Positions 25,683 through 49,379 are shown, numbered from the whole stretch's first letter. The stretch is 51,001 bases of DNA, filler included, from Ginglymostoma cirratum (GCA_024137785.1; 2 parts of 2 records of this genome joined end to end with filler, not necessarily neighbours in it), one strand, 5' to 3'. Notes: generated by a model not told the origin, from the sequence alone. Numbers and translations are program-made.

Positions 25683-27795
25683 GAGGTAACAAGCGTGGGG
25701 CTGGATGAACACAGCAGGTCAAGCAGCATCATAGGAGCAGGAAATCTTGACGTTTTGGGCCTAGACCCTTCATCAGAAATGGGGGAGGGGAAGAGGGTTC
25801 TGAAATAAATAGGGAGAGAGGGGGAGGCGGATAGAGGATGGATAGAGGAGAGGATAGGTGGAGAGGAGGCAGACAAGTCGAAGAAGCGGGGATGGAGCTA
25901 GTAAAGGTGAGTGTAGGTGGGGGGGGGGTGGGTAGGGAGGAGATAGGTCAGTCCAGGGAGGACGGACAAGTCAAGGGGGCGGGATGATGTTCGTAGATGG
26001 GAGATGGGCGTGGGGCTTGAGGTGGGAGGAGGGGATAGGTGAGAGGAGAACCAGGTTAGGAAGGTGGAGATGAGCTGGGCTGGTTTTGGGATGCGGTTGG
26101 GGGAGGGGAGATTTTGAAGCTTGTGAAATCCACATTGATACCATTGGGCTGCAGGGTTCCCAGGCTGAATATGATTTGCTGTTCCTGCAGCCTTCGGGTG
26201 GCATCACTGTGGCATTGCAGGAGGCCCAGGATGGACATGTCGTCTGAGGAATGGGAGGGAGAGTTGAAATGATTCGCAACTGGGAGGTGTAGTTGTTTGT
26301 TGCGAACTGAGCGCAGGTATTCTGCAAAGCGGTCCCCAAGCCTCCGCTTGGTTTCCCTGATGTAGAGGAAGCCAGAACGGGCACAGCGGATGCAGTATAT
26401 CACATTGGCAGATGTGCAGGGGAACATCTGCCTGATGTGGAAAGTCTTCTTGGGGCCTGGGATTGGGGTGAGGGAGGAGGTGTGGGGGCAGGTGTAGCAC
26501 TTCCTGCGGTTGCAGGGAAAAGTGCCGGGTGAGGTAGGGCTGGAGGGGAGTGTGGAGCGGACAAGGGAGTCGCGGAAGGAGTGGTCCCTCCGGAAGGCAG
26601 ATAAGGGTGGGGAGGGAAAGATGTCTTTGGTGGTGGGGTCTGATTGCAGATGGCGGAAGTGTCGGAGGATGATGCGTTTGATCCGGAGATTGGTGGGGTG
26701 GTACGTGAGGATGAGGGGCATTCTTTTTTGGTTATTATTGCGGGGACGGGGCATGAGGGATGTGTTACAGGAAATGCGGGACACATGGTCGAGGGCGTTC
26801 TCGACCACTGTGGGGGGGATGTTGCGGTCCTTGAAGAATGAGGACATTTGAGATGTGCAGGAGTGGAATGTCTCATCCTGGGAGCAGATGCGGCGGAGGC
26901 GAAGGAATTGGGAATAGGGGATGGCATTTTTGCAGGAAGGTGGGTGGGAGGAGGTGTATTCCAGGTAGCTGTGAGAGTCAGTGGGCTTGAAATGGACATC
27001 GGTTTCTAGGTGGTTACCCGAGATGGAGACAGAGAGGTCCAGGAAGGGGAGAGAGAGGTGTTAGAGATGGTCCAGGTGAACTTAAGGTTGGGGTGGAAGG
27101 TGTTGGTGAAGTGGATGAACTGTTCAAGCTCCTCGTGGGAGCACGAGGTGGCGCCGATGCAGTCATCAATGTAACGGAGGAAGAGGTGGGGTTTAGGGCC
27201 AGTGTAGGTACGGAAGAGGGATTGTTCCACGTAACCTACAAAGAGGCAGGCATAGCTTGGAACCATGTGGGTACCCATGGCCACCCCCTTTGTCTGTAGG
27301 AAGTGGGAGGAATTGAAAGAGAAGTTGTTGAGGGTGAGGATGAGTTCGGCTAAGCGGATGAGGGTGTCGGTGGAGGGGGATTGGTCAGTTCTGCGGGACA
27401 GGAAGAAGCGGAGGGCCTTTAGGCCATCTGCATGAGGAATACAGGTGTATAGGGACTGGACGTCCATAGTAAAAATGAGGTGTTGGGGACCGGGGAATTG
27501 GAAGTTCTGGAGGAGGTGGAGGGCGTGGGTNNNNNNNNNNNNNNNNNNNNNNNNNNNNNNNNNNNNNNNNNNNNTTAATTAATTAANNNNNNNNNNNNNN
27601 NNNNNNNNNNNNNNNNNNNNNNNNNNNNNNTTAGGAGAGGCTTCGCAGTGGGGTTAAAATTGTTTCAGAGATAGTAGGAACTGCAGATGCTGGTGAATCC
27701 GAGATAACAAGGTGTAGAGCTGGATGAACACAGCAGGCCAAGCAGCATCAGAGGAGCAGGAAGGCTGACGTTTCAGGCCTAGACCCTTCTTCAGT
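25683..27795 (-). mobile_element. Penelope-like retroelement (RT plus GIY-YIG endonuclease), frameshifted, spanning the gap
   Basis: DVQSLYT.IP..GVAMG..FLRYIDD (27006-27467); NVIYCIRC..LYI.ET.R.L..RF.E..NGIN (26056-26847); same terminal repeat at 25683-25776 and 27667-27795. Confidence 0.93.
27531..27630. other. Assembly gap with artificial TTAATTAATTAA spacer
   Basis: 44 N, TTAATTAATTAA (27575-27586), 44 N. Confidence 0.97.
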
Positions 27796-29000: not shown

Positions 29001-30974
29001 ATATTCTTCCTCCATTATTTTTCCTCTTAAAAAGCATGAACCAAAACTATTCTGAAGACAGTGGTACCTTCGATAAGTTCCATGATCCGATATGCCATTT
29101 GTAATGTATGAAAAAATATTGGATAGAAAACATTGGACTTAATGGGCCTTGCTACAGACATTCCTCCAGTCAAATAAAAACTTCCAACGTTATCTGCGTG
29201 TTCTTTCCCAAAACAGTGACTGTTTGAAATTGTATCTTACCACCTCCCGATTAACTTCTTGAGATTCAATTTGTTTTTGTTTAAATCCAGTTTCATATCA
29301 TCAAATGGGAAATGTCAGTTTGCATTGTGTTAAATTTAATTACGTGTTAAATTTCTTTAATTCGGTTCTACAAATATCAGCTCTACCTGAGCTAAACCTA
29401 CACTGATTTCCTTCTGGGGCGTTATCCCAGTTCTCTCTGAGCCTCTGAAATCCAAATCAGCATTCATCTTGCTCCCTTCTGTCATTTCGTGTTTCGTCTG
29501 CAAATACCAACATTTGGGGCTGAAGTCGAACTTCTGAAATACAACTTGTGTGATGTCATTGTCCAACAAAGGAGGTGGTCACGTGCCTGTGAAATGTGAC
29601 ATTTCCGGCTTAAGTAATTATTCATTGTTCACTCGGTCGATTTGCCAAAACCTGCCTGTTCTTGCATGAAAGAATGGAAATTAAATATCGCAGTACCTGT
29701 GTCAATATTTAACATAATTCAGCTTTTATTCTGTAAATAGAGCTGATTTAATTATTGTTTTCTGAATTGCAATTGCAGAAACTGTTGGTGGGATGACAAG
29801 ATTTGACTTCATTCTGAAGATGCTATGTTAATTTCCTGTATGGCACTTTCCAATTCGACACATATTGCCTTAAACTTCATGTTTCCGCACGAGCATCCGA
29901 TTCTGCAACATCCTTTCCAATTTATCCATTTGAAATTTTATCATCAATGCTGTGCCATTAAGATTTCTTTTAGTCTCAGTTTAAGAATTTCATTCTTCAT
30001 TATTTGGGGAATGGAACGGTGTTGCTGTGTATTTTTTGCCTTTCCTGTGATTATATCTACTCTTTTTCCTTTCACATCCGAGATGAAAGTTTCTTTTTTC
30101 AATGCAAGTTGGCCATCTAATTATATTTCCGTGTTTATCAATATATTTTACTTAAATTCCCATCACTGAAGCATGTCATTCAGTCCAACAGATCATATCA
30201 ATGATTGTATTCTGAATCAATCTCTTTAATATATTTTCGCCCGTCTCATTAAATTCCTTCGCCTTTTAATCTGAAATGATTGTTGTGTTCCTCTCGAACT
30301 ATTAACTGTGTTCAAAATAATCTTGCTAATATTTTAAGCTTTTGGCACAACCTTGTGCAGGCAGATGGGATTCATTTTTCACGGCATCATGGTCGGTACC
30401 GACTTGGTGGTCAGAAGGGCCTGTTCCAATATTGTGCTTTTCTACGTTCTTTGTTTTCATTTGAGTGAGTTCCCTCAGTTGAAGGTGGAATGCCATCAAA
30501 TTGAAGATACCATGTGGGACAGGGTACTTAACCAGCATTGTCTCCGGTTTTGACACTTTCCCAGCAGTTCATTGCCACGGAAGTAGTCCTCCAAATTAGA
30601 TACAATAAATAGAATCTGATTCTTACCGTTTCGCCTGAGTTTGTATGTCACAATGAGGAATAATGTCAATCCACCTCCCAAACACCGTAAAATCGTTGGA
30701 TAAGGGATGTCATTGTAGCCTGCGCGATTATCTGTGAGGATAGATGTAATTTCAACATGTTTGCAGCGTTACAGAATAATAATAAATCCCAATTTATTTC
30801 AGCTATTGCACTTTTTAGATTTAATTCAGGGAGAATAATTCTGATGAGGTTTGAGCATTATACATTCAAGAAACATGATACATTTCATCTGACGATTCTG
30901 GTTTGCAGACAACATTATGCAGTCATTGCACACCGAGGGATTATTAGAGCTGGAGAAGAAAATAACCACTTGAG

Positions 30975-34610: not shown

Positions 34611-34989
34611 GCATCGCGGGAAATGGAGAGTGTCTTAAAATGACAATCATTTTCTAAGCAGATCACAGCGCAACAAAATTAATATCAATGACTGAACTTA
34701 CCCAATTTAATGAAAGGGTCGGTTCCATTGGCTGGTGTCTGAAGTGAGATGTGAGAGACTTGACAGGTGTAAACTGTGCCGCTCTGAGCGGCTCCTGTCT
34801 CAGTCTGGTTACTGGAAGCCTCAGACAGCCCGATTGCATTCTGCAGTTTGAAATGTTTCGACCCGGTAGCAACTTCAATTTATTTTTGTATCAAGTGATG
34901 TTCAGATTGCCCCCCAATTGGAAACTCATTCTATCGTCACAGTCAATATTGTTTTACGAAGGGAAATGACCTTTTACCTAAAGATAGAT

Positions 34990-36319: not shown

Positions 36320-36865
36320 AGAACATAGAACATAGAACAATACAGCGCAGAACAGGCCCTTCGGCCCTCAATGTTGCGCCGACCTGTGAACTAATCTAAG
36401 CCCATCCCCCTACACTATCCCATCATCATCCATATGCTTATCCAAGGACTGTTTAAATGCCCCTAATGTGGCTGAGTTAACTACATTGGCAGGCAGGGCA
36501 TTCCACGCCCTTACCACTCTCTGAGTAAAGAACCTGCCTCTGACATCTGTCTTAAATCTATCACCCCTCAATTTGCAGCTATGCCCCCTCGTACTAGCCG
36601 ACGTCATCATCCTGGGAAAAAGACTCTCACTGTCCACCCTATCTAATCCCCTGATCATTTTGTAGGTCTCTATTAAATCCCCTCTTAGCCTTCTTCTCTC
36701 CAATGAGAACAGACCCAAGTCCCTCAGCCTTTCCTCATAAGACCTTCGCTCCAGACCAGGCAACATCCTGGTAAATCTCCTCTGCACCTTTTCCAATGCT
36801 TCCACATCCTTCCTGTAATGGGGCGACCAGAACTGGACGTAATATTCCAAGTGAGGCCGCACTAG
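36320..36865 (-). mobile_element. Young CR1-type LINE 3' fragment
   Basis: Open ORF 36410-36862, (ATAGAAC)n tail, AGTCAA on both flanks. Confidence 0.93.
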
Positions 36866-39582
36866 TCAAGGCAAGATTCGGGGAAGGTCTTTGGCCCACT
36901 CCCTGAAATAATTAGTTATTGCTTGACTCACAGTCTGCCATTACCAGAATTCTGCCTGCCTCTTGGGTTATTGTCCCCAGTCATGGGGTAACGCTCCAAC
37001 ACACCCCAAGTTCCTTCGCCGCCCACGTGTGATGTCCTGAACCTGGGATCTCGGCAACACAGCCTTCAGAGCACTAGATCCTGGCTGCAGAGAACAATGT
37101 TTATTCCTCTGTATTATTTCCGATTACAACTACATTTCTCTTTTCTCCCCAGTCTTGAATGGGCGTGTGGACCATCGCGCTGCAGTTAGTTTGGTCATCA
37201 TCCATGCAATGCCTGCTCTCACCTGCATGGGAAGCAAGAATCTCAAACCTGTTAGACAAGCTCAAGGGCTGACATTCCTTCAGAGTGATCTCCTGGATCC
37301 CTCTGCCTGCCTTGCTTATAGTCACAAAAACAGAAAATGCTGAAAAAAAACTGTGCGGGTCTGGCAGCATCTGAGTGAAAGCAGAGTTCATATTTTGTGT
37401 CCAGTGGCCGTACTTCAGAACTTCACGACTCAGCCTATGTCTGTAATTTCATGAATATTTGGTTGAGTTTTGTGGCGATGTTTCTATCTCATTTTAATGA
37501 GGTGATCTTGTCATAATTCTTAAGTCTTACAGTCGGATTTCCCCTTCATCTATTAAGCTAGAATCAAAACTGTTCATGACACCATGCAATAAATGTGCAC
37601 GGATCTTGAGACTTTGAACATAATGTATTTCAATGTACAATACTGAATGGAACATGGCAGATATCCTGTTTGGATGCATGGCATATTACTGCAGAAATCC
37701 AATCACACATGCAGCAGTGTGATGGAAAACTTGGAAGGCTGGGGGAAGAATAGAAGCGCAGTTGACACAGAGTACTGTCTTCAGTACATTTACTGTCTTC
37801 AGTAATTCAGGTACTAGAGACCCAGCTGAAGATCCAAGCTCAAAATAGGACTTGATCAATGCATTAAGTACCAGATAATAGGTGGAACAAACACATTGAA
37901 AGGACGAACAAATGTTGAGTAGATGCATAAGTGAATACTTGTAGTGGGTTTGGAATCAAATATTAGTATAGTGATTATGTACTGGTGCAATAGCTGACAG
38001 AAAACACAGCTAACGCACTGATATACACACAACCATACAAAGTGAAGCATTTACATGACAATCATTCCACCAGAGCAAGGTAAACTCAAACTAAAATACA
38101 CCGCATAAACATGTAATCCAAAAGTAATACTAACACCCATTGGCTTTCAAACACAGACAGGTAGCACAAGATACATACATAAGATATACACACAGAAACA
38201 TTGAGACAAAACACATGTAGCACACCTTCAAAGGTATACGTTATAATGAGAAAACTTACTGGTTTATATCACACACATATAGACACGCAAAAGTGAGTCA
38301 TTCACCGTGAACCTCTTGCTTAGCAAAACTGTTAGATTTCACTGCAGACGTGACACAAGTAGGTCGCAATATACAACAGCAATGCTCCTCCTGGGTCAAC
38401 AACAGTCGGATCACCGAATCGCCAACAAATGATTTACACGATAACAAGCAGTGGGATTCATTCAAAAACATGATGTCACACTTACGAGCAGCGGTCCTCA
38501 GCAGTGTTATGTCGCACCATTACCCGCAGCACCAGTGCAATCCCAGCAGAAACTCTGAGCCATGATCAGCAACATCGAGTTTCCACGAAAAGAACTCACG
38601 AAACACTCGTTGGGATCACCATCACAAAGTTAAGCATGATGAAGTTACAGCAACAGAAGTGCTAAGTCACCAGGAAACAAAACCTTATTGCAAGAACCAA
38701 CATTAATCAATGGAAGAGAGAAAAGATCAATAGCAAATTGTCTATCACGAGCACTTGTCTCACCCAGATACAAGAATACATATCAGGTCCATATCAGTAA
38801 CTACATCTTGCGAGCAGCAGTACTCTGACCCAGTAAACCACAGGAAACAGGTCAGCAGCAGATAAAGAATAATAACTAACAATAACTGCACAGTCATTGC
38901 ACAATCACCAGCTGCAGTGTACAGTGTGAACATGTGCTGGGCAGATAGAAAAATCGTTTCCCCCAAAAGCGGTTGTGTGGAGACAGATATTTGATCAACG
39001 TTTTGTTCAATTTGGGATGATGTTCCATTCCATAGTTGATATGAATGTGGTTAGAATCAAGCATGCCTATCAATTACAGAGTCCCATGTCAACTGAAGGA
39101 GAGTCAGTGTGGCGGACTCAACCCTAAATCACCATTGCTTTTTTAAAAAATCACAATGCTACCGAGACGTACAGTTGAATTTCCACAGCACACACCCATC
39201 CAAAAGCCCAGAGGTGCAGTGAAAACAGTGAATTGGGAGCTGACTGTTTCATTGCACTACCATGGATTTGTGAGCACGAACTGGTCAATTTGACGATTCG
39301 CTAAGAGCTGCAGCAAATCGGAAATGTTCAGTGGATGCAAAAATGCATATTGTGCTATAGGTTGATGAGAAAGGAAAAGTTTCAAAGTTCCACAATGTGC
39401 GGTTATCTCTCACGTTAAACGGAAACCAGAGCCCTGATGTTGGAGATACAGTTATATTTGCTAAGATTTATTGCGACAGTCTCAATACCATACAATGTTC
39501 AGGTGCTTCTATCCATACTGCACTTTTATGACTTTTGTTCAGTGAATTGCTAGCGAATTTGATTTTATCAACTTTGGTCAAA

Positions 39583-39637
39583 ATGTCGGTCCTTGAAAGA
39601 GCGTGGTACCTGTCAGTCTTGGGCATTATTTACACAG
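39583..39637 (+). CDS. Leader exon of the VJ-C1 receptor gene (MSVLERAWYLSVLGIIYT)
   Basis: ATG, 55 nt, hydrophobic, phase-1 donor CAG|GTACAC, 109-nt intron, in frame with the V exon. Confidence 0.8.
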
Positions 39638-39746
39638 GTACACAAACCAAAACTTGTCTGATAAAAAAAAAAGAGTAAAAACTGTCGAGAGTTCTGCTTC
39701 GAATCCACGCTTATATATGTGTATGTTTCTTTTTTGTTTCTGACAG

Positions 39747-40067
39747 CTACCAACGAAATCCCTTTCTCTGCGACACAATTCCCCACGTGCCTGACCGCAC
39801 TGGAAGATACAAATGTGTCCATGTGTTGTTCCATTCCGCCATTCGATAATAACCCATCGGTGGACGTTTACTGGCGGAGAGGCGACAAGGACAATGCTTT
39901 GAACCTGACAGCAGACAATAGGAAACTAATGTTCCCATTCAAACATGGATCTACTGAGTTCCAACTGCTGAATGTACATTTCCAGGACTCCGGAATCTAT
40001 TATTGCAGCATTAAGGCCGCGGGCAGGAAGATTTTCAATGGAACTGGGATGAGGCTGATCGTGCACG
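39747..40067 (+). CDS. Germline-joined VJ-type Ig domain exon (NCR3/NKp30- or SIRP-like)
   Basis: TQFP..VSMCC..VYWRR..FQLLNV.FQDSGIYYC..IFNGTGMRLIVH in one 321-nt phase 1-1 exon; donor G|GTAAGT; no RSS. Confidence 0.93.
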
Positions 40068-40279
40068 GTAAGTCCCCCTGAACTATTAATGGGTCAGTGT
40101 AAAGTTCCACAGCTATGAAAGGATATGTCACAGAATAAAATAACAGAAACTAGTGTTCGTTGCTGAGATCTTTTTGCGCTTGCCGGGCCCCTGCTATGTA
40201 TCGTAAATCAGTTAGTGTAATTCAAAAAGCTGACTTTTCTGTTCGTCAATGCTCTCGAAACGAGCACAACCTATTTAAA

Positions 40280-40742
40280 GTGATAGTAGGAACTGCCGAT
40301 GCTGGAGAATCTGAGATAAAACGTCGTGGAGCTGGATGAACACAGCAGGCCAAGCAGCATCAGACGAGCAGGAAAGTTGACGTTTCAGGTCGAGACCCTT
40401 CTTCAGAAATGGGGGGGTGAGGGGAGGAGATTCTGAAATAAATAGGGAGAGAGGGGGAGGCGGACAGAAGATGGATAAAGGAGAAGATTGGTTGAGAGGA
40501 GACAGACAGGTCAAAGAGGCGGGGTTAGAGCCAGTGAAGGTGAATGTTGGTGGGGATTTAGGTGGGGGATAGGTCAGTCCAGGGAGGACGGACAGGTCAA
40601 GGGGGCGGGATGAGGTTAGTGTGTAGTAGATGGGGGTGGGGCTTGAGGTGGGAGGAATGCTTAGGGAGGTGGGGACGAGCTGGGCTGGTTTTGGGATGTC
40701 GTCGGGGGAGGGGAGAATTTGAAGCTTGTGAAGTCCACATTT
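40280..40742 (-). mobile_element. Penelope-like element 3' fragment in the V-C1 intron
   Basis: Aligns by eye with 25683-26135. Confidence 0.85.
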
Positions 40743-43700
40743 AAATATCGCTTTTTTTTAAAAGAATTTAAAATAATATGCAGATCCTTGGGCCACAAAG
40801 AACGCTTATTCCTATTGCACATACATCACAATTTCCTTCATGATGTGTTTTAGTGAAGTTATCGTCAATCGATTCACTTGAGATTATTAAAATAATTATG
40901 TGGTGCTCTCGCCTAATAATTTGGAACACTGATCATGTCAGGAAGAAGAAAGGGAGGAAGGTCATGGATTCGAGAGTTTGTGTTTAAGAAGGTTTGTCAA
41001 GTAACAGCGCATTTTATAGATGACGCACACTGCCAGCAGAGTGTCTCTACAGTTCCAGCATTTACTGTCCTATGTGTACCGTCATCGGTGGAGTTTATTC
41101 AGACTTTTGCGGAATATTGTTGTAGTAACGTGGATACACAATTTAGCGGGTATTGGATCGTAATTTTTGCTTGTAGCTGGCAATGTGTAAACTCCTGAGT
41201 CATTTGTTGCAGAATCCATGAGGTTTCTGGCCGCACATTTCTGTTTAACTGCCTAACAAATTCAAACATGGGATAAACAGAAATTACTGGAAAATCTCAA
41301 CCGGTCTGGCAGCATCTCTGCAGAGAAATCAGAGTTAACGTTTCGGGGCCAGTGACCCGTCTTCAGAATTCTAAATTCTGTTTACTGTTACTGATTTCCA
41401 GCACCCACAGTTCTTTCGTTTTTCTCTTTCAGACATGAAAAATATTGATTGAACTAATGTTCATTTAGTTTAAAAGATCCATCGCAAAGGAAGTATTCGG
41501 TTCTCAACGAAATCTTATGTGGATCCATTTCATTCGTTATTCTCATGTGTAGAACTCAGTGTATTTATCCTTAGCACAGACTCTTTCCCTGATTCTCTTT
41601 GGAATCAGTCAGGATGCAGTAATGGAATCAATTGGGATACGGTGTGCCTGAGGAAGTGAATGTTCTGAAGGAGGGTTTCCGGACGCGAAACTTTAACCCT
41701 GCTTTCTGTCCACAGATCTTGCCAGCTCCGCCCAGTTTCTCCAGCAATTTCTGCTTCTGCCACAGTATGTCAGTAACCATATCACAAAAGTGGAAACGGG
41801 GGATGGATATGTTGGACTGAATGAAAATAAAACAAAGTTACACAAACACAGCTGTTATAAATTGCGATTTAGACAATAATTATGTCTAGAATTGCTGACA
41901 GCGGATTATATCTATGCTGATAGTGTTTACACAGAATATCCCGCTGGTTTCATGGCTTTTTCCCCTTGGAGGATAGAAGACAGAGTGGTGACCTTACAGA
42001 GGTATATAAAATCATGAGAGGCATAGAAAAAGTAGATGATGGACTCCGTTTCCCCGTGATTTCATCCTGTCGGTCTCTGTGGCTCTGTGACTCTCTGGCC
42101 ACTTGCACATTGCAAGCTAACACATTCTGAAAGCACATTAAGAGATGGTATTGCATTGGGTGAAGTCATTTACATTAAGATGGCGCATACATGATAAGTT
42201 TGTTTGAACCGATGGAAAATTATGCTTACAGTTATCTTCATTTATGTGCAATGGATTTAGAAACAGCGAGACCCACGATTGACCTGGTGAAATGTATTAA
42301 TCTGGAGATGTACAGCACGGAAACAGACCTTTCGCTTCAATTCGTCTGTGCCAAACAGACACCCTAGATAACTCTAGTCCCATTTTCCAGCATTTGGCCC
42401 ATATCCCTCTAAATCCTTCTTATTCATATACCCATCCAGATGCCTGTTAAATGTTGTAATTGTACCAGACTCCACAAATTCATCTGGCAGCTCATTCCAT
42501 ACACGCACCACCCTCTGTAATGCAGCAAATATTCAATGAGATCTAAAATAAAGAGGTTTTTTTTCAAGTGCTTGTTGAGAAATTAAAATAATAAACCAGC
42601 GGGAGTTCCCATGCTTGAAGGCCGATTTGTGAACTTACTTTTTTGGAACATCTGTTGCTCTAATTCAGTCTGAGTGCCATAGGATCTCATCAGTGAGACT
42701 GAAGTGTTTCTCATAATCCGATGCCATACAGCGAAACATGATTTGAAACTGGGATGAAGTAGATTAAAGACAAGTTAATGACGCAAAATCACAAATTGCT
42801 GAAAAATCTCAACGTGTCTAGCAGCATATGTGTTGAGGGAAAACAGAGTTAACGCTCGCGCCCAGTGACCCTTCCCCAGAGCTCAATGATGCAAATTCAT
42901 TCAGAGGAACCAAGCGCAAAAAGATGTGAGTTACTTTCCACAGGTTCTGCAGAAGGAAGATGTTCTCCACTGGGTGGAACGTTAACGGAGATGCTGTTTA
43001 GGTAACGATAGAACTGGAATAGCATCATTGCGTGAGGCTTAACAAAATGCATGCATAAAGTATATTGGGAATACAGAAACAAACAAACTTCTGTAGAGAG
43101 AATGGGTTTTGACAGAACAGTTTTCAGTCAGCAGGCGGAATCGGGGATGGGGTGATGAGGGGTGATTGACAAACTGAGTACGTCAGAGATTAGGTTTAAC
43201 TCCGAAAAGTAAAATACCCGACTTTAAAGGTTGGCTATTTACTTTGGAAGTGGAATATGGTTTGATGTATTAGTTGTGAAAGCACTTGACAATTAATGCA
43301 TTAGTGGCGAACGGCCCAAAGGCATTTTTTTTTTCTGATGAAGGGTTTAGGCCCGAAACGTCAAGTTTTCCTGCTCCTATGATGCTGCTTGACTTGCTGT
43401 GTTCATCCAGCCCCATGCTTGTTATCCCATGTTCAAATCCCGCCGTGGCGACCGTTGTCCATTGCTGGAAAAGATCTTTCGGTGTAGAAAATTGCTCCCC
43501 TTCCCTGGTCTGGCCTGCATGAGACTCCAGGCCCACTGCAAAATGGTTGACTCTTAACTGCTCTCTGGGCAGTTGAGATTTTGATTCATTATTGTCACGT
43601 CTACCGAGGTGCAGAGAAAAGTGTTGTTTTACATGCTTTACAAGCACATCGGACTGTACAGGTGCATCAGGGTAACAGGATACACATTCGTCCTTTCACT

Positions 43701-43762
43701 TGTTTTGCTGTTGTCATGTACTAGTAGCGTTTTAATACATATTTCCATCAATTTATTCGCAG

Positions 43763-44038
43763 TGCCACCAACTTCAGTGAAGATTGCTCATCTGTCCGAT
43801 CAGCCCCTCACCCTCCTCTGCAAAAGGACTCCTTTTTTCCCAGGGGAGATTCACGTAGTTTGGTATAAAAATGATATCGAAATTACATCTGAGATCAACG
43901 CAATAAAAGTGTGGAAAGAGGGGAGTTTGTTTTAAGTTTCCAGGGTTCTCAATTGTGTGGAGAGCGTATCGGTTTATACGTGCCAGATTTTCCACACAAC
44001 ACTCAAGCACCCAGCTAGTGTCAGTTACACGATTCAAG
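43763..44038 (+). pseudogene. C1-set Ig domain exon with one in-frame stop
   Basis: VPP..LTLLC...FFPGEIHVVWYKN..SLF*VSRVL..YTCQIFH.TL..P; 276 nt, phase 1-1; TAA at 43933-43935. Confidence 0.92.
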
Positions 44039-45469
44039 GTGAGAAATGTGAGCCTTTATTACTGTTTCTCAGTCCCTCGTGTTGTGCGACATCCCGCGAC
44101 CTATTTGAGTCATTTTTAAAGTGTGATAGTGAAAAGCGCCACTGTCCATAGCTTTTGCTTTTTTTGGCGAGGTATCTGACAACATGGCGTAAATGTAAAC
44201 ATGTAAATTTGGTGATATAACTTTGAATGCGGACTATAAATTTCGTAGCTGATCCATTTCATTCTCATGGCATGAGTTATCGGCGATGGAACAGTGATAT
44301 TTTGCATTTATTAGACATCACTTAATTTCACAGCATCCATGGACTTTCTGCTTCAAGATTTTTGCATGGTTTCTAATGACACATGCAGATGTGCAGGTCG
44401 AAGAATTGTTGAGGGTCAAAATGAAAAAGATTTTAGTTTGATTCAGATGTGATCTAAACTCGATTTACATTTGGGAGGTTGCATAAAGTTTACTTTGGCA
44501 GTGTAATCGAAATAAACAGGTCAAATGACATGGATGGACCTGGTATGTTGGGGTATAAACTTAGCGTTCGTAATAGAGCGGAGAAACTGGAGTCATTGCC
44601 TTCAGAAAACTAAACGCCTGCAATCACTGATGTGAGACTGTAACAAAATCTAAAATACTGGTTGACGAACTGGGTCAAATCAATAAAACAAAATGTCTTT
44701 AATTACCCTGTTACTAGCAAGTGCCCAACTTGATACTGCAACCCAGTCCTGGGCACTTGATGAGAAAAATCTTAAGAATGGCCATCGGTTACTACACGTT
44801 AAAAAAAAACCTCCATAGTTATTGTGATTTCAGCATTTAAAATGGATAAACGTCAGGAGGTATTAATTACACAATGAAGGGGCCAGACTGCGTGCATGTA
44901 GTTTTTATTTGTTATCCCATTACTTTCATTAAAGTCAATCGACTTTTTTCTGTATACTTGTGGTTAATTTTTGCTCCACATTCGAGTAGTCGGCCTGTGT
45001 GCCAAAGCCTACCTACCTCCTAAAAGGAGGTGGGCTCTACCTGCTTTGTGTGTCAGTCACTGTTATCAAAACGATCTAATTTCTCAGCTGCTTCTTTTAT
45101 TTTTGTCTAATTACTTTTCTGTAATTTGCACAAAGCTATTTATTTAACTTTAATCGACACAATGATACTTAGAGATATGACGCACAAATACACAACAAAC
45201 CTGTCGCAATATGCTCACATATATAATCTGAACTTGATTAACATTTGAAAATTATTCAGAATTGATAGTCACGTTATATTTTATCATCTGTGACATTTTG
45301 TCAGGCTAAACTTTATTCGGAATAATGAATCACTTTGGAGCGTGCGTTGTACCCTCCATGATAGAGGATGTCCAAGTATTGGCCTGACTTTTTATTGTGA
45401 TTTTGCTTAATTATTTGGAACAATCTTCTCTGCAGAATGCAAACATTCAACTTATTCTGCACCTTCCAG

Positions 45470-45577
45470 GCGACGGCCGCGGTAACTTTCCTGACGCGTT
45501 GGCGCCTGAATGTGCAGTGGGCGGGTTAATAGTTTGATTGTCTCTTGTTGCAATTCTTGTCAAGCGACGGATATCAG
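45470..45577 (+). pseudogene. Transmembrane exon with in-frame stop (GDGRGNFPDALAPECAVGGLIV*LSLVAILVKRRIS)
   Basis: CCTTCCAG acceptor, phase 1-1, hydrophobic span then KRR; TGA at 45535-45537; donor is CAG|GC. Confidence 0.75.
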
Positions 45578-46103
45578 GCAAAACTGCAGACCAGTTCTGA
45601 TAGAACTCTGTTTAGTTGGTTTGTTTGGTCTACTCATTGTTGAATGCTGTAACAGGGACCGTGTAAAATCCAGACTCAGATCTAGATATTCAGAGCAATG
45701 CAGATATCATTCAAAATGCTTGGCTTTCCTTGGTCTCAGTGCTCAAAAGCGGGCAATGCCTGAAGAGAAACCCTTCAGAATAATATGTCCATATCTCGAC
45801 ATTAATGTGAACCAAGGCTTTGATCTCCAGAATAAATGCCAATGATAATGTAGATGGTCGAGATTAAATACCCTGAATGCTGAAACAGGGAAGAGGATCA
45901 ACCGTGAATGAGAAAGTGTGAAATGTGCACTGCAAAAGAATATATTGGACTTTAGACCAAATCTAGTCCATAAGTAGAACCTGATGTTATTTTCTATTGG
46001 TGTCGAATGTGGTCACTTTAATCCAATATTGGGGAGCTCTTCATGCGTCAAGGTCATGATAAGTTTTATTGTTGATATGAGTTTTATTCTCCAATAAGAA
46101 CAG

Positions 46104-46141
46104 AGATTACTGAAGACATACCAGACCGGTTGGAGACACAG
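46104..46141 (+). CDS. Candidate short cytoplasmic exon (EITEDIPDRLETQ)
   Basis: AG acceptor and CAG|GTTAGT donor; phase 1 to 0 joins the TM exon to the last exon in frame; an alternative acceptor exists at 46098. Confidence 0.5.
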
Positions 46142-46287
46142 GTTAGTTCATTCTCATCCAATCAGAAATTAAAATATGCTGTACATTGGCACCATAATTA
46201 TAGGAATTGCACTGAGATAGCAGAACTGTTTTCGTTTATCACAGAACAATCCGTGAGTATGGCTGAGTTAACGTTTCATTTACTTCG

Positions 46288-46418
46288 CTGTGGCGCAGTG
46301 GTTGAGCAGTGCTGCCTCACAGCGGCAGGGATCCGCGTGTGATTGAAGCGTCGGGCGGCTGTCTTTGTGGAGTTTGCACATTTTCCCCGTGTCTGCGTCA
46401 GTTTTTTCCGGGTGCTCA
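46288..46418 (+). mobile_element. tRNA-derived V-SINE (HE1-like) 5' part
   Basis: TGGCGCAGTGG box A, TGCTGCCTCACAGC, TGTGGAGTTTGCACATT.TCCCCGTGTCTGCGT core. Confidence 0.8.
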
Positions 46419-47078
46419 GAAGGTCGCCGAGTTAGCGTTTCTTTCACTTCGTTATCTTCCTCCCCATTGCGAGTGTAATCAGTACCTGATAACTGCAGCA
46501 GCAGAACTTGCTTTCAGGTAATCCATCAATTCTCACAGACTTCAATGCTTGTTCTGATGTTTTCATAGAGCGAGCTGGACAACTATTCAAATATGTGAAG
46601 GATCCCATTCCCGCCCGGTTCTGTTTCAAACGACATTCTCATCCACAATCTTGTACACAGGCTCTCTCTGCACTGATCTGGACTGATCTCCGGGCAGGAT
46701 AACCAGCTGTGCCCTCTTCTCTGCCAAGAGCCACTGAGGCCAACTGCTTTTTTCTGAAATTTCAGAAGTTCTAACTTGGATGCCTGTGAATTTCTGGTTA
46801 GCGAAATGAGATCATTTTTTAAAAATTTGGCAATGATTTAAACTGAACAAGCAGTGGCAAAGAATGGGCACACAACTGTGGGAATTGGATCCGCTGATCT
46901 GCTTATATGAGTATTCTCACATATATAATAGCACTTACCTCTACTACATTGTAGTCACAAACTACACTGCTCTATTTCTCTGCCCTTGTAAGGATTGACT
47001 GTATTGATTCTTGTGTTACTGCATGATGTCTTCAGCATGTAATGTGCAAATAATATCTGCCCAAATATATCTCATCAG

Positions 47079-47195
47079 ATCAGGAAGAGGAGAGAAGTGA
47101 ACAGCCCTTTCTATGCTGCTCTCAATTTCAGTGAGCACAGGAAACCTTCAAAACCCAGGCATGTGGAAGAGCTCATCATCTATGCCAAGGTATGA
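47079..47195 (+). CDS. Terminal cytoplasmic exon with two tyrosine motifs (IRKRREVNSPFYAALNFSEHRKPSKPRHVEELIIYAKV*)
   Basis: IIYAKV fits the ITIM consensus; PFYAAL is ITIM-like; CATCAG acceptor; TGA at 47193-47195. Confidence 0.75.
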   Translation: MRKRREVNSPFYAALNFSEHRKPSKPRHVEELIIYAKV

Positions 47196-49379
47196 GTTTG
47201 ACAAAAAGGAGTGATCAAGTACAATCGTCTAATTTCAATGATGCACATTGACAAAAATTGAACAATTTATTTGAGCAAAAAATGCAAGTGATCTTTCATT
47301 GTTGCTCCCTCAGACTAAACAGAGCATCAACAGTAAACTGACATATGCATCTATGCAATTCACCAATTCCCGGAAGAATGAGAAAAACAACAATCAGAAA
47401 ATGGAAATGGAATATGCACAGATCAAGCCAAACAAGCCAAATGGAGAATCTGAGCTCATATAAACAACTAAAGTGACCAACAATGGGCCAGTCACACAGG
47501 TCCACCATGCAGTGTCTGATTATGGATACTACCAGTACATTGTTGGTTATTTATAATCACATTGACACATAATGGAATGGAAGGAACATACAGAAGATTT
47601 ACTGAGTGAACAACAGAGGGAACTGACACAACAGCTCATCTTGAAATCTACAGCTCCTTTGAAAGAAACAAAGCAGTACAGTATTCATCAAAGTTTAAAA
47701 GTGGGACCATTGAAATGTGAAATGCATTTGTCTAATTGGTTAGGAGTAGATGAGGCTGATTATTTGGGTCAGTTCTGCAACATTATAAAATTTTATTCAG
47801 TAAGAGGAGTACATTTCTGTTCGATCATCTTGACTCCTCTGACAGCATTTAGGTTTGACAAGAAAATGTTCTCACAATTCTTCGAATTATCATATCAGGA
47901 TATCCTTACATTCCTTTCTGTTTCAAGCACTTATCCAGCTCTGCCTGCAATGCACTAATCATCATCATCTCAATGAGATCTTGTAGGAGTAAATTAAGCT
48001 ACTACGTATTTCCTGGGTTAGCAGAAGAAAATTACGACAAGGACAAGAACAATGTATTCACATTAGAGTGACCTTCACTGAAATTTCTTGCTTGCATCAC
48101 ACTATATCCCACCTCATGCCCACACCTTATAGCCCGTAACCCCCTTGTCCATCAAACATCTGCCTAACAATTCTGAATAAATTCTGAAAATATTCAATGG
48201 CCAATCTACAACTGGCTGCTGGGAAAGAAAGTGTTAAAGTCTAGTCACCAGCTGGGAAAGTAAAATTTTTCCTAGTTTAAGTATGGCATAGGTGAGTTCT
48301 TTATTGGAAATCCTCCACGCCCCAGTTTTAAGCTTATGTGGAGATGTCTTTCTGGTTTTTAGCCTGTCAAATCTGCTTAGCTGTTTCAAGATGATCTACT
48401 TTCATTGTTAATAACTTCAATGACATTGGTCCAATCTGTACAAGCCTTTCTGATTAGGCCAGGAATCACATGACACCAGGATGCAGTCCAAGAGATTTAT
48501 TCATCTGATGAAGGGATTACACTTTGAAAGCTTGTGTTTTCAAATAAAGCGGTTAGACTCTAACCTGCGTGTCGTGTGATTTCTGTCCTTGTCCACGCCA
48601 GTCCAACACCAGCAACTCCACACCATGGCCTTGCTGATTAGACAGCCCCTTCGCTCCACATGCCCCATTTTAAGTGAGCATACAAACTGTACAATCTACA
48701 ATGTTTGATTGATTAGTAATCCAAAATTCCAGCTAATTTTCTGAGGACATTATTTTGTATCCCACTATGGCAGTTGGTGAAATTTGAATTCAGTAAATAA
48801 TAAGGAATTAAGATGTTGGCTTAATTGTGACCATGCAACAGTTATTCAATACCTGAACACCCAAGTGTTCAGCAATGTCCATTTTGGAAGGAAATTGGCC
48901 ATCTGTATCAGTCCTGACCTACTGATGTCTCTAGACCTATGGCAATGTGGTTGGACATCAACTGCCACCTAACAAGACCTCACAAGCCATTCAGCTCAAT
49001 GGAATCTTGGGATGGGCAATAAATCCTTGCTCAAGCAGTGTTGTCCACATGTCATAAAAGAATAAAACAAACCTCTGGACTCGGTCGTGACGAAGCAAGT
49101 GAGGAGAGGAAGAAGTGAATGAAGAAAGACTTTGAGCAGAATGCGATTCAGCATTATTCAAAAAGGGGAGGTAAAAGGGGAATAAATATTGATCTTGCTT
49201 TTGGTGCACCTTCTTTGCAGTCATAACTTTGAGCTCCATGCTGTGTTCAACCACCCCGATGATCTTTATATGTTACGATCTGCATGCAAAACAAAACCTT
49301 CCACTTTACCGAGGTACATGTCACAATAATAAATCAAATCAAATCATGCCAAATCAAAAAAATCAAACTATAGGCTGAT

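What the first reader, a model, noticed from the sequence alone, without database searches (positions are those of the whole stretch)
39583..47195. Non-rearranging VJ-C1-TM-ITIM receptor gene beside the TCR beta V-D-J cluster
Seen: six phase-compatible exons (leader, V with built-in J-like FNGTGMRLIV strand and no RSS, C1-set, TM, two cytoplasmic exons) pointing away from TRB, about 23 kb upstream of the intact TRBV. Known: C1-set domains are largely confined to Ig/TCR/MHC/tapasin/SIRP, and a non-rearranging VJ-C1 receptor is the proposed substrate of the RAG transposon; NCR3, SIRP and PRARP-type genes share parts of this layout. Inference: this may be a relic of a proto-antigen-receptor or NK-type family physically linked to TRB. 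The V is shorter than and unlike a rearranged TRB V, which argues against a germline-fixed TRB rearrangement.
Basis: partly seen in the sequence, partly recalled or inferred. Interest (0 to 1): 0.92.

Follow-up and report, generated by a model that had tools for sequence, protein, structure and literature searches.

The report
Disabled shark VJ-C1 receptor gene copy
This is a real, transcribed, non-rearranging immunoglobulin-type receptor gene from a large gene family found in sharks, rays and chimaeras, but this copy has two premature stop codons and its claimed position next to the T-cell receptor beta locus comes only from how the window was stitched together.

Summary
The gene is real. Seven GT-AG, phase-compatible exons on the + strand (39583-47463) encode leader, a VJ-type V-set domain with no RSS, one C1-set domain, a TM segment and a three-exon tail with tyrosine motifs. 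A public transcript contig joins the V exon to the C1 exon exactly as predicted.

- The C1 exon has an in-frame TAA (43933-35), and the transcript carries it too.
- The homologous TM exon is 45470-45593, not 45565-45662, and has an in-frame TGA (45535-37).
- The gene ends at 47463, not 47195.

None of the four tail tyrosines fits a strict ITIM.

The gene belongs to a large clustered family found across cartilaginous fish: sharks, rays and Callorhinchus. RefSeq names its members inconsistently (SIRP-alpha-like, tapasin-related-like, NCR3LG1-like, Ig-lambda-like; NCR3-like for a C1-less isoform). The closest homologue is Chiloscyllium plagiosum XP_043563426.1, with the same layout and no stops.

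This copy also departs most from family-conserved residues, and a sister species keeps the consensus at several of those sites. It is most likely an expressed pseudogene.

TRB linkage cannot be tested, because the window was joined from unrelated pieces. Verdict: new, disabled member of a known kind; modest interest.

The parts
39583..39637 (+). Leader exon (ATG at 39583; split leader, ends in phase 1, donor ACACAG|gtacac)
   Evidence: Sequence. Aligns to the N-termini of family proteins. Exon table.
39747..40067 (+). VJ-type V-set exon, phase 1 to 1. It encodes both Cys, the Trp, the DSGIYYC motif and the J-like G strand FNGTGMRLIV. There is no RSS; a GT donor follows directly.
   Evidence: Pfam V-set 2.4e-11, profile positions 1-109 of 109. 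Family HMM E 1e-49. AlphaFold model pLDDT 88 with V-type strands. No heptamer. Covered by a spliced transcript contig.
43763..44038 (+). C1-set exon, phase 1 to 1, interrupted by an in-frame stop
   Evidence: Pfam C1-set 1.5e-05 for the first half. Best PDB match is UrIg2, 4.2e-08. Family HMM 9e-21 and 4e-11 for the two halves. Joined to the V exon in X1 contig record 2 with 0 differences.
43933..43935 (+). In-frame TAA (codon 183 of the 360-codon model), at the start of strand E, where homologues have Q, K or H
   Evidence: Present in the transcript contig, which has 0 other letters over 43762-44038.
45470..45593 (+). Homologous stalk/TM exon, phase 1 to 2, weak donor CA|gttctg. It carries Asp and Glu where the orthologue has Tyr and Gly.
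   Evidence: tblastn of P0154, P0007 and P0151. Translation. Exon table. No RNA depth in X1 over 45500-45699.
45535..45537 (+). In-frame TGA inside the TM segment (codon 240), where the orthologue has Leu
   Evidence: It rests on the assembly only: no organism-A reads cover it.
46099..46141 (+). Cytoplasmic exon 1 (TEITEDIPDRLETQ), phase 2 to 0
   Evidence: Aligns to TEISEDIPGQFEEQ and TQITEDIPEQLEPQ in homologues. Sequence. Exon table.
47079..47189 (+). Cytoplasmic exon 2 (..SPFYAALNF..LIIYAK), phase 0 to 0.
   Evidence: 69% identical to P0154 residues 272-310. Family HMM 3.6e-08.
47314..47463 (+). Cytoplasmic exon 3 with LTYASM and MEYAQI motifs and the stop codon at 47461-63.
   Evidence: 66% identical to the C-terminus of P0154. 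Family HMM 7.5e-13.
34727..34924 (-). Decayed second copy of the family, head-to-head with the main gene. The second half of a C1 exon keeps its GT donor; the first half has a stop and a frameshift.
   Evidence: Family HMM 1.9e-11. tblastn. Possible TM (30720-30556) and tail (29506-29378) remnants are only weakly supported (E 0.2 and 1.7), and their tyrosines are replaced.

Best explanation
The locus is a transcribed but disabled copy (an expressed pseudogene) of a multigene family found across cartilaginous fish. The family encodes non-rearranging receptors built as split leader, VJ-type V-set domain, one C1-set domain, TM segment, and a tail of about 110 residues with four conserved tyrosine motifs.

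In intact members the most likely mechanism is inferred from architecture, not shown. The V domain binds a ligand at the cell surface. The tail tyrosines are phosphorylated and recruit SH2 phosphatases, giving an inhibitory signal as in SIRP-alpha and other ITIM receptors. Skipping the C1 exon gives a shorter V-TM-tail isoform.

In this copy a nonsense codon in the C1 exon and a second one in the TM exon prevent any membrane receptor from being made. The RNA seen is V spliced to C1, partly reading on into the next intron, with no cover of the TM exon.
For: Gene structure: seven GT-AG, phase-compatible exons totalling 1080 nt, which gives 359 codons plus stop against 358 aa in the orthologue.

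Domains: V-set and C1-set by Pfam. V fold modelled at pLDDT 88.

Family:
- 163 representative hits at E<=0.001.
- Named RefSeq members from Chiloscyllium, Hemiscyllium, Heterodontus, Scyliorhinus, Cetorhinus, Carcharodon, Mustelus, Heptranchias, Mobula, Amblyraja, Leucoraja, Pristis, Hemitrygon and Callorhinchus.
- Several members per species lie on one chromosome.
- The same gene yields isoforms with and without C1: P0008/P0007 and P0044/P0186.

Transcription and splicing: X1 contig record 2 joins 40066|43762 with 0 mismatches at depth 60. Read-through contigs cover 44009-45316. Depth over the TM exon is 0.

Disablement:
- TAA at 43933 and TGA at 45535.
- 8 of 37 family-conserved columns deviate, the most among 26 sequences compared (range 0-7 for the others).
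- The sister-species contig has the consensus residue at four deviating V sites, including the Thr of the GxGT J motif. Of the ten differences shown, 7 are non-synonymous and 3 synonymous.
- No tail tyrosine fits the strict ITIM consensus, whereas P0151 has three motifs matching the looser ITIM/ITSM pattern used and P0154 one.
Against: - The TGA in the TM exon is supported only by the assembly.
- All splice sites are intact and the reading frame is otherwise open. The decay is therefore recent, or the stops could be a null allele in one individual.
- The RNA depth (about 60) is high for a transcript expected to undergo nonsense-mediated decay.
- Two other family members show 7 deviations at conserved columns, so the conservation test is not decisive.
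- The sister-species contig could come from a paralogue.
- No ligand, phosphatase recruitment or cell type has been shown for any member of the family.
Confidence: 0.75

Rival explanations
1. The gene is functional. The two stops are either errors or a null allele of the sequenced individual, and the species normally makes a full V-C1-TM-tail inhibitory receptor from this locus.
For: All seven exons keep GT-AG sites and compatible phases. The gene is transcribed and correctly spliced from V to C1. The TGA at 45535 has no read support from organism A.
Against: The TAA is present with 0 mismatches in a contig from a separate sequencing run. There are two independent nonsense codons, plus charged substitutions in the TM segment and the highest count of deviations at conserved sites. 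The TM exon has no RNA cover in the run that expresses V-C1.
Confidence: 0.12
2. The locus now makes a truncated soluble product, consisting of leader, V domain and about 57 residues of C1, or a V-C1 read-through form. This product acts as a secreted decoy or ligand rather than a membrane receptor.
For: Transcripts run from C1 into intron 3 and the TM exon is not covered. Other species have annotated V-C1 proteins without a TM segment, such as P0004, P0171, P0172 and P0168.
Against: The TAA falls in the middle of the C1 domain, before strands E-G and the second Cys, so the C1 part cannot fold. The V domain has itself lost family-conserved residues, including the J-motif Thr.
Confidence: 0.06
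3. One reading: a relic proto-antigen-receptor gene that has stayed physically linked to the TRB V-D-J cluster.
For: It has a non-rearranging VJ exon plus a C1 exon. The first half of the C1 domain matches UrIg2, a published candidate relative of the RAG-invaded gene, better than any other solved chain (PMC12227049).
Against: The TRB sequence lies in a different, unrelated piece of the stitched window (the scan program's note). The gene is one of many paralogues in a family across cartilaginous fish. The piece itself holds only this gene, a decayed paralogue and retroelement fragments. For the full-length orthologue, UrIg2 is only about rank 48 among generic Ig, MHC and B7 matches.
Confidence: 0.04

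Closest known systems
RefSeq-modelled VJ-C1-TM-tail genes of cartilaginous fish (closest: Chiloscyllium plagiosum XP_043563426.1 = P0154; also Heterodontus francisci XP_067905922-24 'tapasin-related protein-like', Scyliorhinus canicula XP_038661939 'SIRP-alpha-like')
   Same: Same exon plan, the same seven coding parts and almost the same length (359 vs 358 codons). Identity to P0154 is 64% in V and 66-69% in the tail exons; the first 56 aa of C1 also align closely. The tail motifs YAALNF, IYAQ/K-T, LxY and MEMEYAxIK..NKPNGES are shared.
   Different: The window copy has a TAA in C1 and a TGA in TM, charged residues in the TM segment, and deviations at 8 of 37 conserved columns. No protein from this locus appears in the databases searched.
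SIRP-alpha (PTPNS1)
   Same: N-terminal V domain with a J-like G strand, C1-set domain(s), a single-pass TM and a tail with four tyrosine motifs of the xxYAxL / xEYAxI type. It is the source of many of the automatic names. The SIRP-alpha V domain is among the structural neighbours, at rank 18.
   Different: SIRP-alpha has two C1 domains. It is not among the best 60 sequence matches in the PDB for the V exon, the V profile or the orthologue. Orthology was not tested, and no CD47-type ligand is known.
NKp30 / NCR3, including the published nurse-shark 'NCR3 family' (Kinlein et al. 2021, Immunogenetics 73:333; cited in PMC12227049 and PMC10450919)
   Same: Non-rearranging VJ exon. The family's G strand reads NG-x-G-T-x-L-x-V, which resembles the NKp30 G strand as I recall it; that recollection was not checked against a sequence here. 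The C1-less isoform of a Callorhinchus family member is named 'NCR3-like' by RefSeq (P0186).
   Different: Mammalian NKp30 has no C1 domain, has a charged TM residue and has no ITIM-type tail. NKp30 chains do not appear among the best PDB sequence or fold matches. The 2021 paper is not held in the library, so I could not check whether its eight subtypes are this family.
UrIg / UrIg2 (non-rearranging elasmobranch VJ-C1 genes; PMC12227049, PDB 9dmx)
   Same: Split leader, single-exon VJ domain, C1-type constant domain(s), non-rearranging, found in elasmobranchs. UrIg2 is the best solved-structure match of the first half of the C1 exon, at 4.2e-08.
   Different: UrIg2 has 9-11 C domains and UrIg also has several. 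This family has one C1 domain and a tyrosine-motif tail. For the full orthologue UrIg2 scores no better than ordinary Ig chains.
CD79b (Ig-beta)
   Same: Short V-type domain with a J-like G strand. It is among the best full-length V matches both by profile (7e-12) and by fold (rank 5). CD79b-like proteins from sturgeon, paddlefish and bichir are the first hits outside the family.
   Different: CD79b has no C1 domain and has an ITAM rather than ITIM-like motifs. The similarity is at the general level of V domains.

Membership tests
VJ-C1-TM-tail receptor family of cartilaginous fish (RefSeq models, no agreed name) | Split leader followed by a single V exon that includes the G strand (xNGxGTxLxV) and ends in a phase-1 donor | tested here: met
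   The window reads FNGTGMRLIV, with the conserved Thr replaced by Met.
VJ-C1-TM-tail receptor family of cartilaginous fish (RefSeq models, no agreed name) | One C1-set exon starting VPPTP.., with FFP..WYKN and YTCQVSH motifs | tested here: met
   It is present but interrupted by a TAA at 43933.
VJ-C1-TM-tail receptor family of cartilaginous fish (RefSeq models, no agreed name) | TM exon plus three cytoplasmic exons carrying YAAL, YAQT, LTYA and EYAxI motifs | tested here: met
   The TM exon carries a TGA, and the motifs are degenerate relative to a strict ITIM.
VJ-C1-TM-tail receptor family of cartilaginous fish (RefSeq models, no agreed name) | Uninterrupted reading frame (a functional member) | tested here: not met
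   Two in-frame stops. The TAA is confirmed in RNA.
SIRP family | V domain followed by two C1-set domains | tested here: not met
   Only one C1 exon lies between V and TM, both in the window and in the orthologues.
SIRP family | Specific sequence relationship to SIRP V and C1 domains | tested here: inconclusive
   SIRP chains are absent from the best 60 PDB sequence matches and sit at rank 18 among fold matches. No tree could be built, because no SIRP sequences were available by reference.
NCR3 / NKp30 | A V domain only, a stalk, and a TM segment with a basic residue for CD3-zeta/FcR-gamma pairing | tested here: not met
   A C1 exon is present. The homologous TM segment has no Arg or Lys within the hydrophobic core. 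C1-less isoforms do exist in the family.
NCR3 / NKp30 | MHC linkage in sharks, and identity with the published nurse-shark NCR3 subtypes | not testable with these tools
The piece holds no MHC marker.
UrIg / UrIg2 | A VJ domain followed by three or more C1-type domains | tested here: not met
   Single C1 exon. UrIg2 architecture taken from PMC12227049.
Rearranging TCR/Ig V gene segment | RSS (heptamer-spacer-nonamer) at the 3' end of the V exon, with the J strand encoded elsewhere | tested here: not met
   No CACAGTG or CACTGTG, and no heptamer-spacer-nonamer pattern, in 39500-40400. The J-like strand is in the V exon and is followed by a splice donor.

The most novel reading that the evidence does not exclude
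The family this copy belongs to may never have been described as such. It would then be a distinct lineage of non-rearranging VJ-C1 receptors with a single C1 domain and ITIM-type tails, found across cartilaginous fish, with relatives lacking C1 (V-plus-tail, or several V domains) in coelacanth, lizards and turtles. Such a lineage would be a further surviving relative of the pre-RAG antigen-receptor precursor alongside UrIg, UrIg2 and NCR3. It would be informative on how the VJ-C1 unit was used for inhibitory signalling before rearrangement arose.
Probability: 0.25. Interest if true: 0.6.

Novelty: new member of a known kind. Interest (0 to 1): 0.3.

Why it matters
Non-rearranging VJ-C1 genes in cartilaginous fish are central to current work on how antigen receptors arose (UrIg and UrIg2, PMC12227049). 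This locus shows that such genes also exist as a large, fast-evolving, clustered receptor family with inhibitory-type tails, and that copies are born and die within it. Automatic annotation gives the family at least eight unrelated names, so a curated description and a tree would be useful. The specific claim that made the finding exciting, a lone relic held next to TRB, is not supported, and this particular copy is disabled.

Tried and rejected
1. It has no match to the family HMM, two Glu residues in the hydrophobic stretch, no RNA depth, and its phase does not fit cytoplasmic exon 1. Rejected in favour of 45470-45593.

2. Homologues splice at 47189 to a further exon. Rejected.

3. Specific kinship to NKp30, SIRP or tapasin by PDB sequence search with the V exon, a V-domain profile and the full orthologue, and by fold search. 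Only generic V and C1 similarity came back: TCR V, VNAR, CD79b, PD-1/PD-L1, SIRP-alpha and Ig chains.

4. ESM Atlas look-alikes gave generic V-set clusters only.

5. Literature searches for a described VJ-C1-ITIM family in cartilaginous fish found nothing. The key candidate papers are not held: Kinlein 2021, Flajnik 2012 and Ohta 2019.

6. The last protein search was aimed at finding proteins named as nurse-shark NCR3 within the family. None appeared. This is not evidence of absence, given the word index and the length limits.

7. A V exon for the minus-strand remnant was sought with the family HMM over all six frames. None was found.

8. No earlier notes and no orthologous DNA or synteny could be obtained.

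In one search the exon peptides were aligned to the family separately as fragments and were only counted together.


Full report
Scope. Only window 27631-51001 is genome; positions 1-27574 and 27587-27630 read as N. The scan program's note says the window was joined from unrelated pieces. I treat the TRB linkage as an artefact of the stitching.

What is in the sequence. On the + strand there is a leader exon (39583-39637, ATG to ACACAG|gt, phase 1). Next comes a V exon (39747-40067, phase 1 to 1) whose translation has the two Cys, the Trp, DSGIYYC and a J-like G strand, FNGTGMRLIV, directly followed by a GT donor. Pfam gives V-set at E 2.4e-11, covering profile positions 1-109 of 109. An AlphaFold model built with a small family alignment has pLDDT 88 and the strand pattern of a short V domain. 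No RSS heptamer, and no heptamer-spacer-nonamer pattern, occurs within 39500-40400. A C1 exon (43763-44038, phase 1 to 1) follows. Its first 56 residues hit Pfam C1-set (1.5e-05). Their best solved-structure match is the shark UrIg2 chain 9dmx (4.2e-08), ahead of IgE, TCR-beta and MHC C1 domains.

- The C1 exon has an in-frame TAA at 43933-43935. Homologues have Gln, Lys or His there, at the start of strand E.
Family proteins align to 45470-45593 in another frame, reading GDGRGNFPDALAPECAVGGLIV-stop-LSLVAILVKRRISGK. This carries an in-frame TGA at 45535-45537 where the orthologue has Leu, and Asp and Glu where the orthologue has Tyr and Gly.
- Homologues show three cytoplasmic exons: 46099-46141, 47079-47189 and 47314-47463.
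- The corrected model has seven coding exons, all GT-AG and phase-compatible. They total 1080 nt, which is 359 codons plus stop, against 358 aa in the closest homologue.
- With this splicing the four tail tyrosines read SPFYAAL, IIYAKT, LTYASM and MEYAQI. None fits (S/I/V/L)xYxx(I/V/L). In one search, using a looser pattern that also admits ITSM-type sites, Heterodontus P0151 has three matching motifs and Chiloscyllium P0154 one.

RNA evidence.
- In run X1 of the same organism, a 493-nt contig at depth 60 maps to 39851-40066 and then directly to 43762-44038 with no mismatch. The V-to-C1 splice is therefore real, X1 holds cDNA, and the TAA is present in the transcript.
- That contig ends exactly at the C1 donor. 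Other X1 contigs read through the donor into intron 3: 44009-44918 at depth 16, then down to about 5 as far as 45316. X1 depth over the TM exon is 0.
- A poly-A RNA run of another sample (X21) has no reads on the V or C1 exons, so expression is tissue- or sample-restricted.
- Run X4 holds an unspliced V-exon-plus-intron contig.
- The TGA in the TM exon is not covered by any organism-A run and rests on the assembly alone.

What family it is.
- A full HMMER scan of 1.84 billion representatives with the V exon gave 163 hits at E<=0.001. These include many proteins of 260-450 aa with the V domain at the N-terminus.
- Look-ups name them as RefSeq models from Chiloscyllium, Hemiscyllium, Heterodontus, Scyliorhinus, Cetorhinus, Carcharodon, Mustelus, Heptranchias, Mobula, Amblyraja, Leucoraja, Pristis, Hemitrygon and the chimaera Callorhinchus.
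- Their automatic names disagree: SIRP-alpha-like, SIRP-beta-like, tapasin-related-like, NCR3 ligand 1-like, Ig lambda-1-like, CD276 homologue, H-2 class I-like, or uncharacterized.
- Several members per species sit on one chromosome or scaffold, so the family is clustered.
- A family HMM matches every window exon (V 1e-49; C1 halves 9e-21 and 4e-11; tail exons 4e-08 and 7e-13). It also shows that about 70 of the representatives share the V-C1(-TM-tail) layout.
- The same gene gives isoforms with and without the C1 exon: Heterodontus P0008/P0007 and Callorhinchus P0044/P0186. RefSeq calls the C1-less Callorhinchus isoform 'NCR3-like'.
- Relatives without C1 occur in other vertebrates: V plus a similar tail in coelacanth, two V domains in a lizard, and five V domains in turtles.
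- The closest homologue is Chiloscyllium plagiosum XP_043563426.1 (P0154), at 64% identity in V and 66-69% in the tail, with no stops. No protein from this very locus is in the databases searched.

Is this copy decaying?
- It has the two nonsense codons described above.
- It deviates at 8 of 37 columns that are at least 85% conserved in 25 full-length members. That is the highest count of all sequences compared; the others range from 0 to 7, and most have 1-3.
- DNA contigs of a sister species (X5, 3-7% divergent, including introns) differ from the window in the V exon at ten listed sites, 7 non-synonymous and 3 synonymous. At four of these the sister species has the family consensus where the window does not: Ala to Val, Cys to Tyr before the first Cys, Pro to Leu, and Met to Thr in the GxGT J motif. 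This fits relaxed constraint on the window lineage.
- These are only the differences the tool displayed, and the contig could come from a paralogue. The sister-species letters at the two stop codons were not shown.
- The intact splice sites and otherwise open frame indicate that any loss is recent, or that it is an allele.

Surroundings. Upstream on the minus strand lies a more decayed family copy. It consists of the second half of a C1 exon (34879-34727, HMM 1.9e-11, GT donor kept) preceded by a stop and a frameshift, plus weak TM-like and tail-like remnants at about 30.6 and 29.4 kb with the tyrosines replaced. Between the two copies and in intron 2 are retroelement fragments and very high-copy repeats. 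Nothing else gene-like was found in the piece.

Relation to known families. The architecture works like SIRP-alpha (V with a J-like strand, C1, TM, four YxxL/I-type motifs). However, it has one C1 domain rather than two, and no specific sequence kinship to SIRP appears in PDB searches. It shares the non-rearranging VJ exon with NKp30/NCR3, together with the NG-x-GT-x-L-x-V strand, which I compare from memory only. The published 'highly divergent' nurse-shark NCR3 family may be this family: that is Kinlein et al. 2021, cited in PMC12227049 and PMC10450919. That paper is not held, so this remains open. UrIg and UrIg2 are the published non-rearranging VJ-C1 genes of elasmobranchs, but they have many C domains and no such tail. 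Fold search gives only generic V-domain neighbours: TCR V-beta, VHH, VNAR, CD79b, PD-1, PD-L1 and SIRP-alpha.

Mechanism. What is shown: gene structure, domain types, V-C1 splicing, the stops, and family membership. What is inferred: intact members are type I membrane receptors whose V domain binds a ligand, and whose phosphorylated tail tyrosines recruit SH2 phosphatases to give inhibitory signalling. C1-exon skipping would tune the reach of the ectodomain. This copy cannot make such a receptor. Its RNA is either a by-product of a still-active promoter or, less likely, encodes a truncated soluble V product.

Verdict. The finding is a real feature that is partly mis-modelled, and its interpretation goes beyond the evidence. 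It is a disabled new member of a known, though poorly named, receptor family of cartilaginous fish. The TRB adjacency is not evidence. Interest is modest for this locus. The family as a whole would merit a curated description if it is not the published shark NCR3 family.

There was only one read-laying run, and its tables were truncated. Organism names are coded.

Noticed in passing
window 34727-34924 (-), with possible remnants at 30556-30720 (-) and 29378-29506 (-): A second, more decayed copy of the same receptor family lies head-to-head with the main gene. Half a C1 exon is well preserved (YTCQVSHISLQTPAN, GT donor kept). The upstream half has a stop and a frameshift. No V exon was found, and the tail tyrosines are replaced.
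   Followed up: partly
window 36410-36862 (-); also 41966-42130 (+) and 42374-42511 (-): There is a 150-aa ORF whose sequence looks like the C-terminal part of a LINE (CR1/L2-type) reverse-transcriptase ORF. Shorter pieces of the same kind lie inside intron 2. This is judged by eye from the translation and was not searched.
   Followed up: no
window 40100-40900, 41100-41500, 41900-42100, 42300-42700, 43300-43700: These intron-2 stretches have contig word depths of thousands to hundreds of thousands in organism A's runs, reaching the millions in the sister-species DNA run X5, and the raw poly-A RNA reads also pile up there. They are therefore very high-copy interspersed repeats. One pair lies in inverted orientation: 40327-40375 vs 43367-43415, 90% complementary.
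   Followed up: partly
window 39723-39878 (run X1 contig record 1): A 907-nt transcript contig of the same organism matches the 5' half of the V exon at only about 91%, at half the local depth. At the listed sites 39771, 39796 and 39825 it carries the alternative letters, and two of these (39771, 39825) restore the family-consensus residue (Val, and Tyr before the first Cys). This suggests a close, expressed and possibly intact paralogue or a divergent allele elsewhere.
   Followed up: no
window 40069: In the sister-species DNA contig the V-exon donor GT reads GC (T>C at 40069). Several replacements cluster in the CDR3-like loop at 40014-40025.
   Followed up: no
proteins P0087 (Latimeria), P0140 (Pogona), P0018 (turtles): V domains of this type occur outside cartilaginous fish without a C1 domain. 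Some carry a similar multi-tyrosine tail: coelacanth has V plus tail, a lizard has V-V, and turtles have five V domains named pIgR-like or titin-like.
   Followed up: partly
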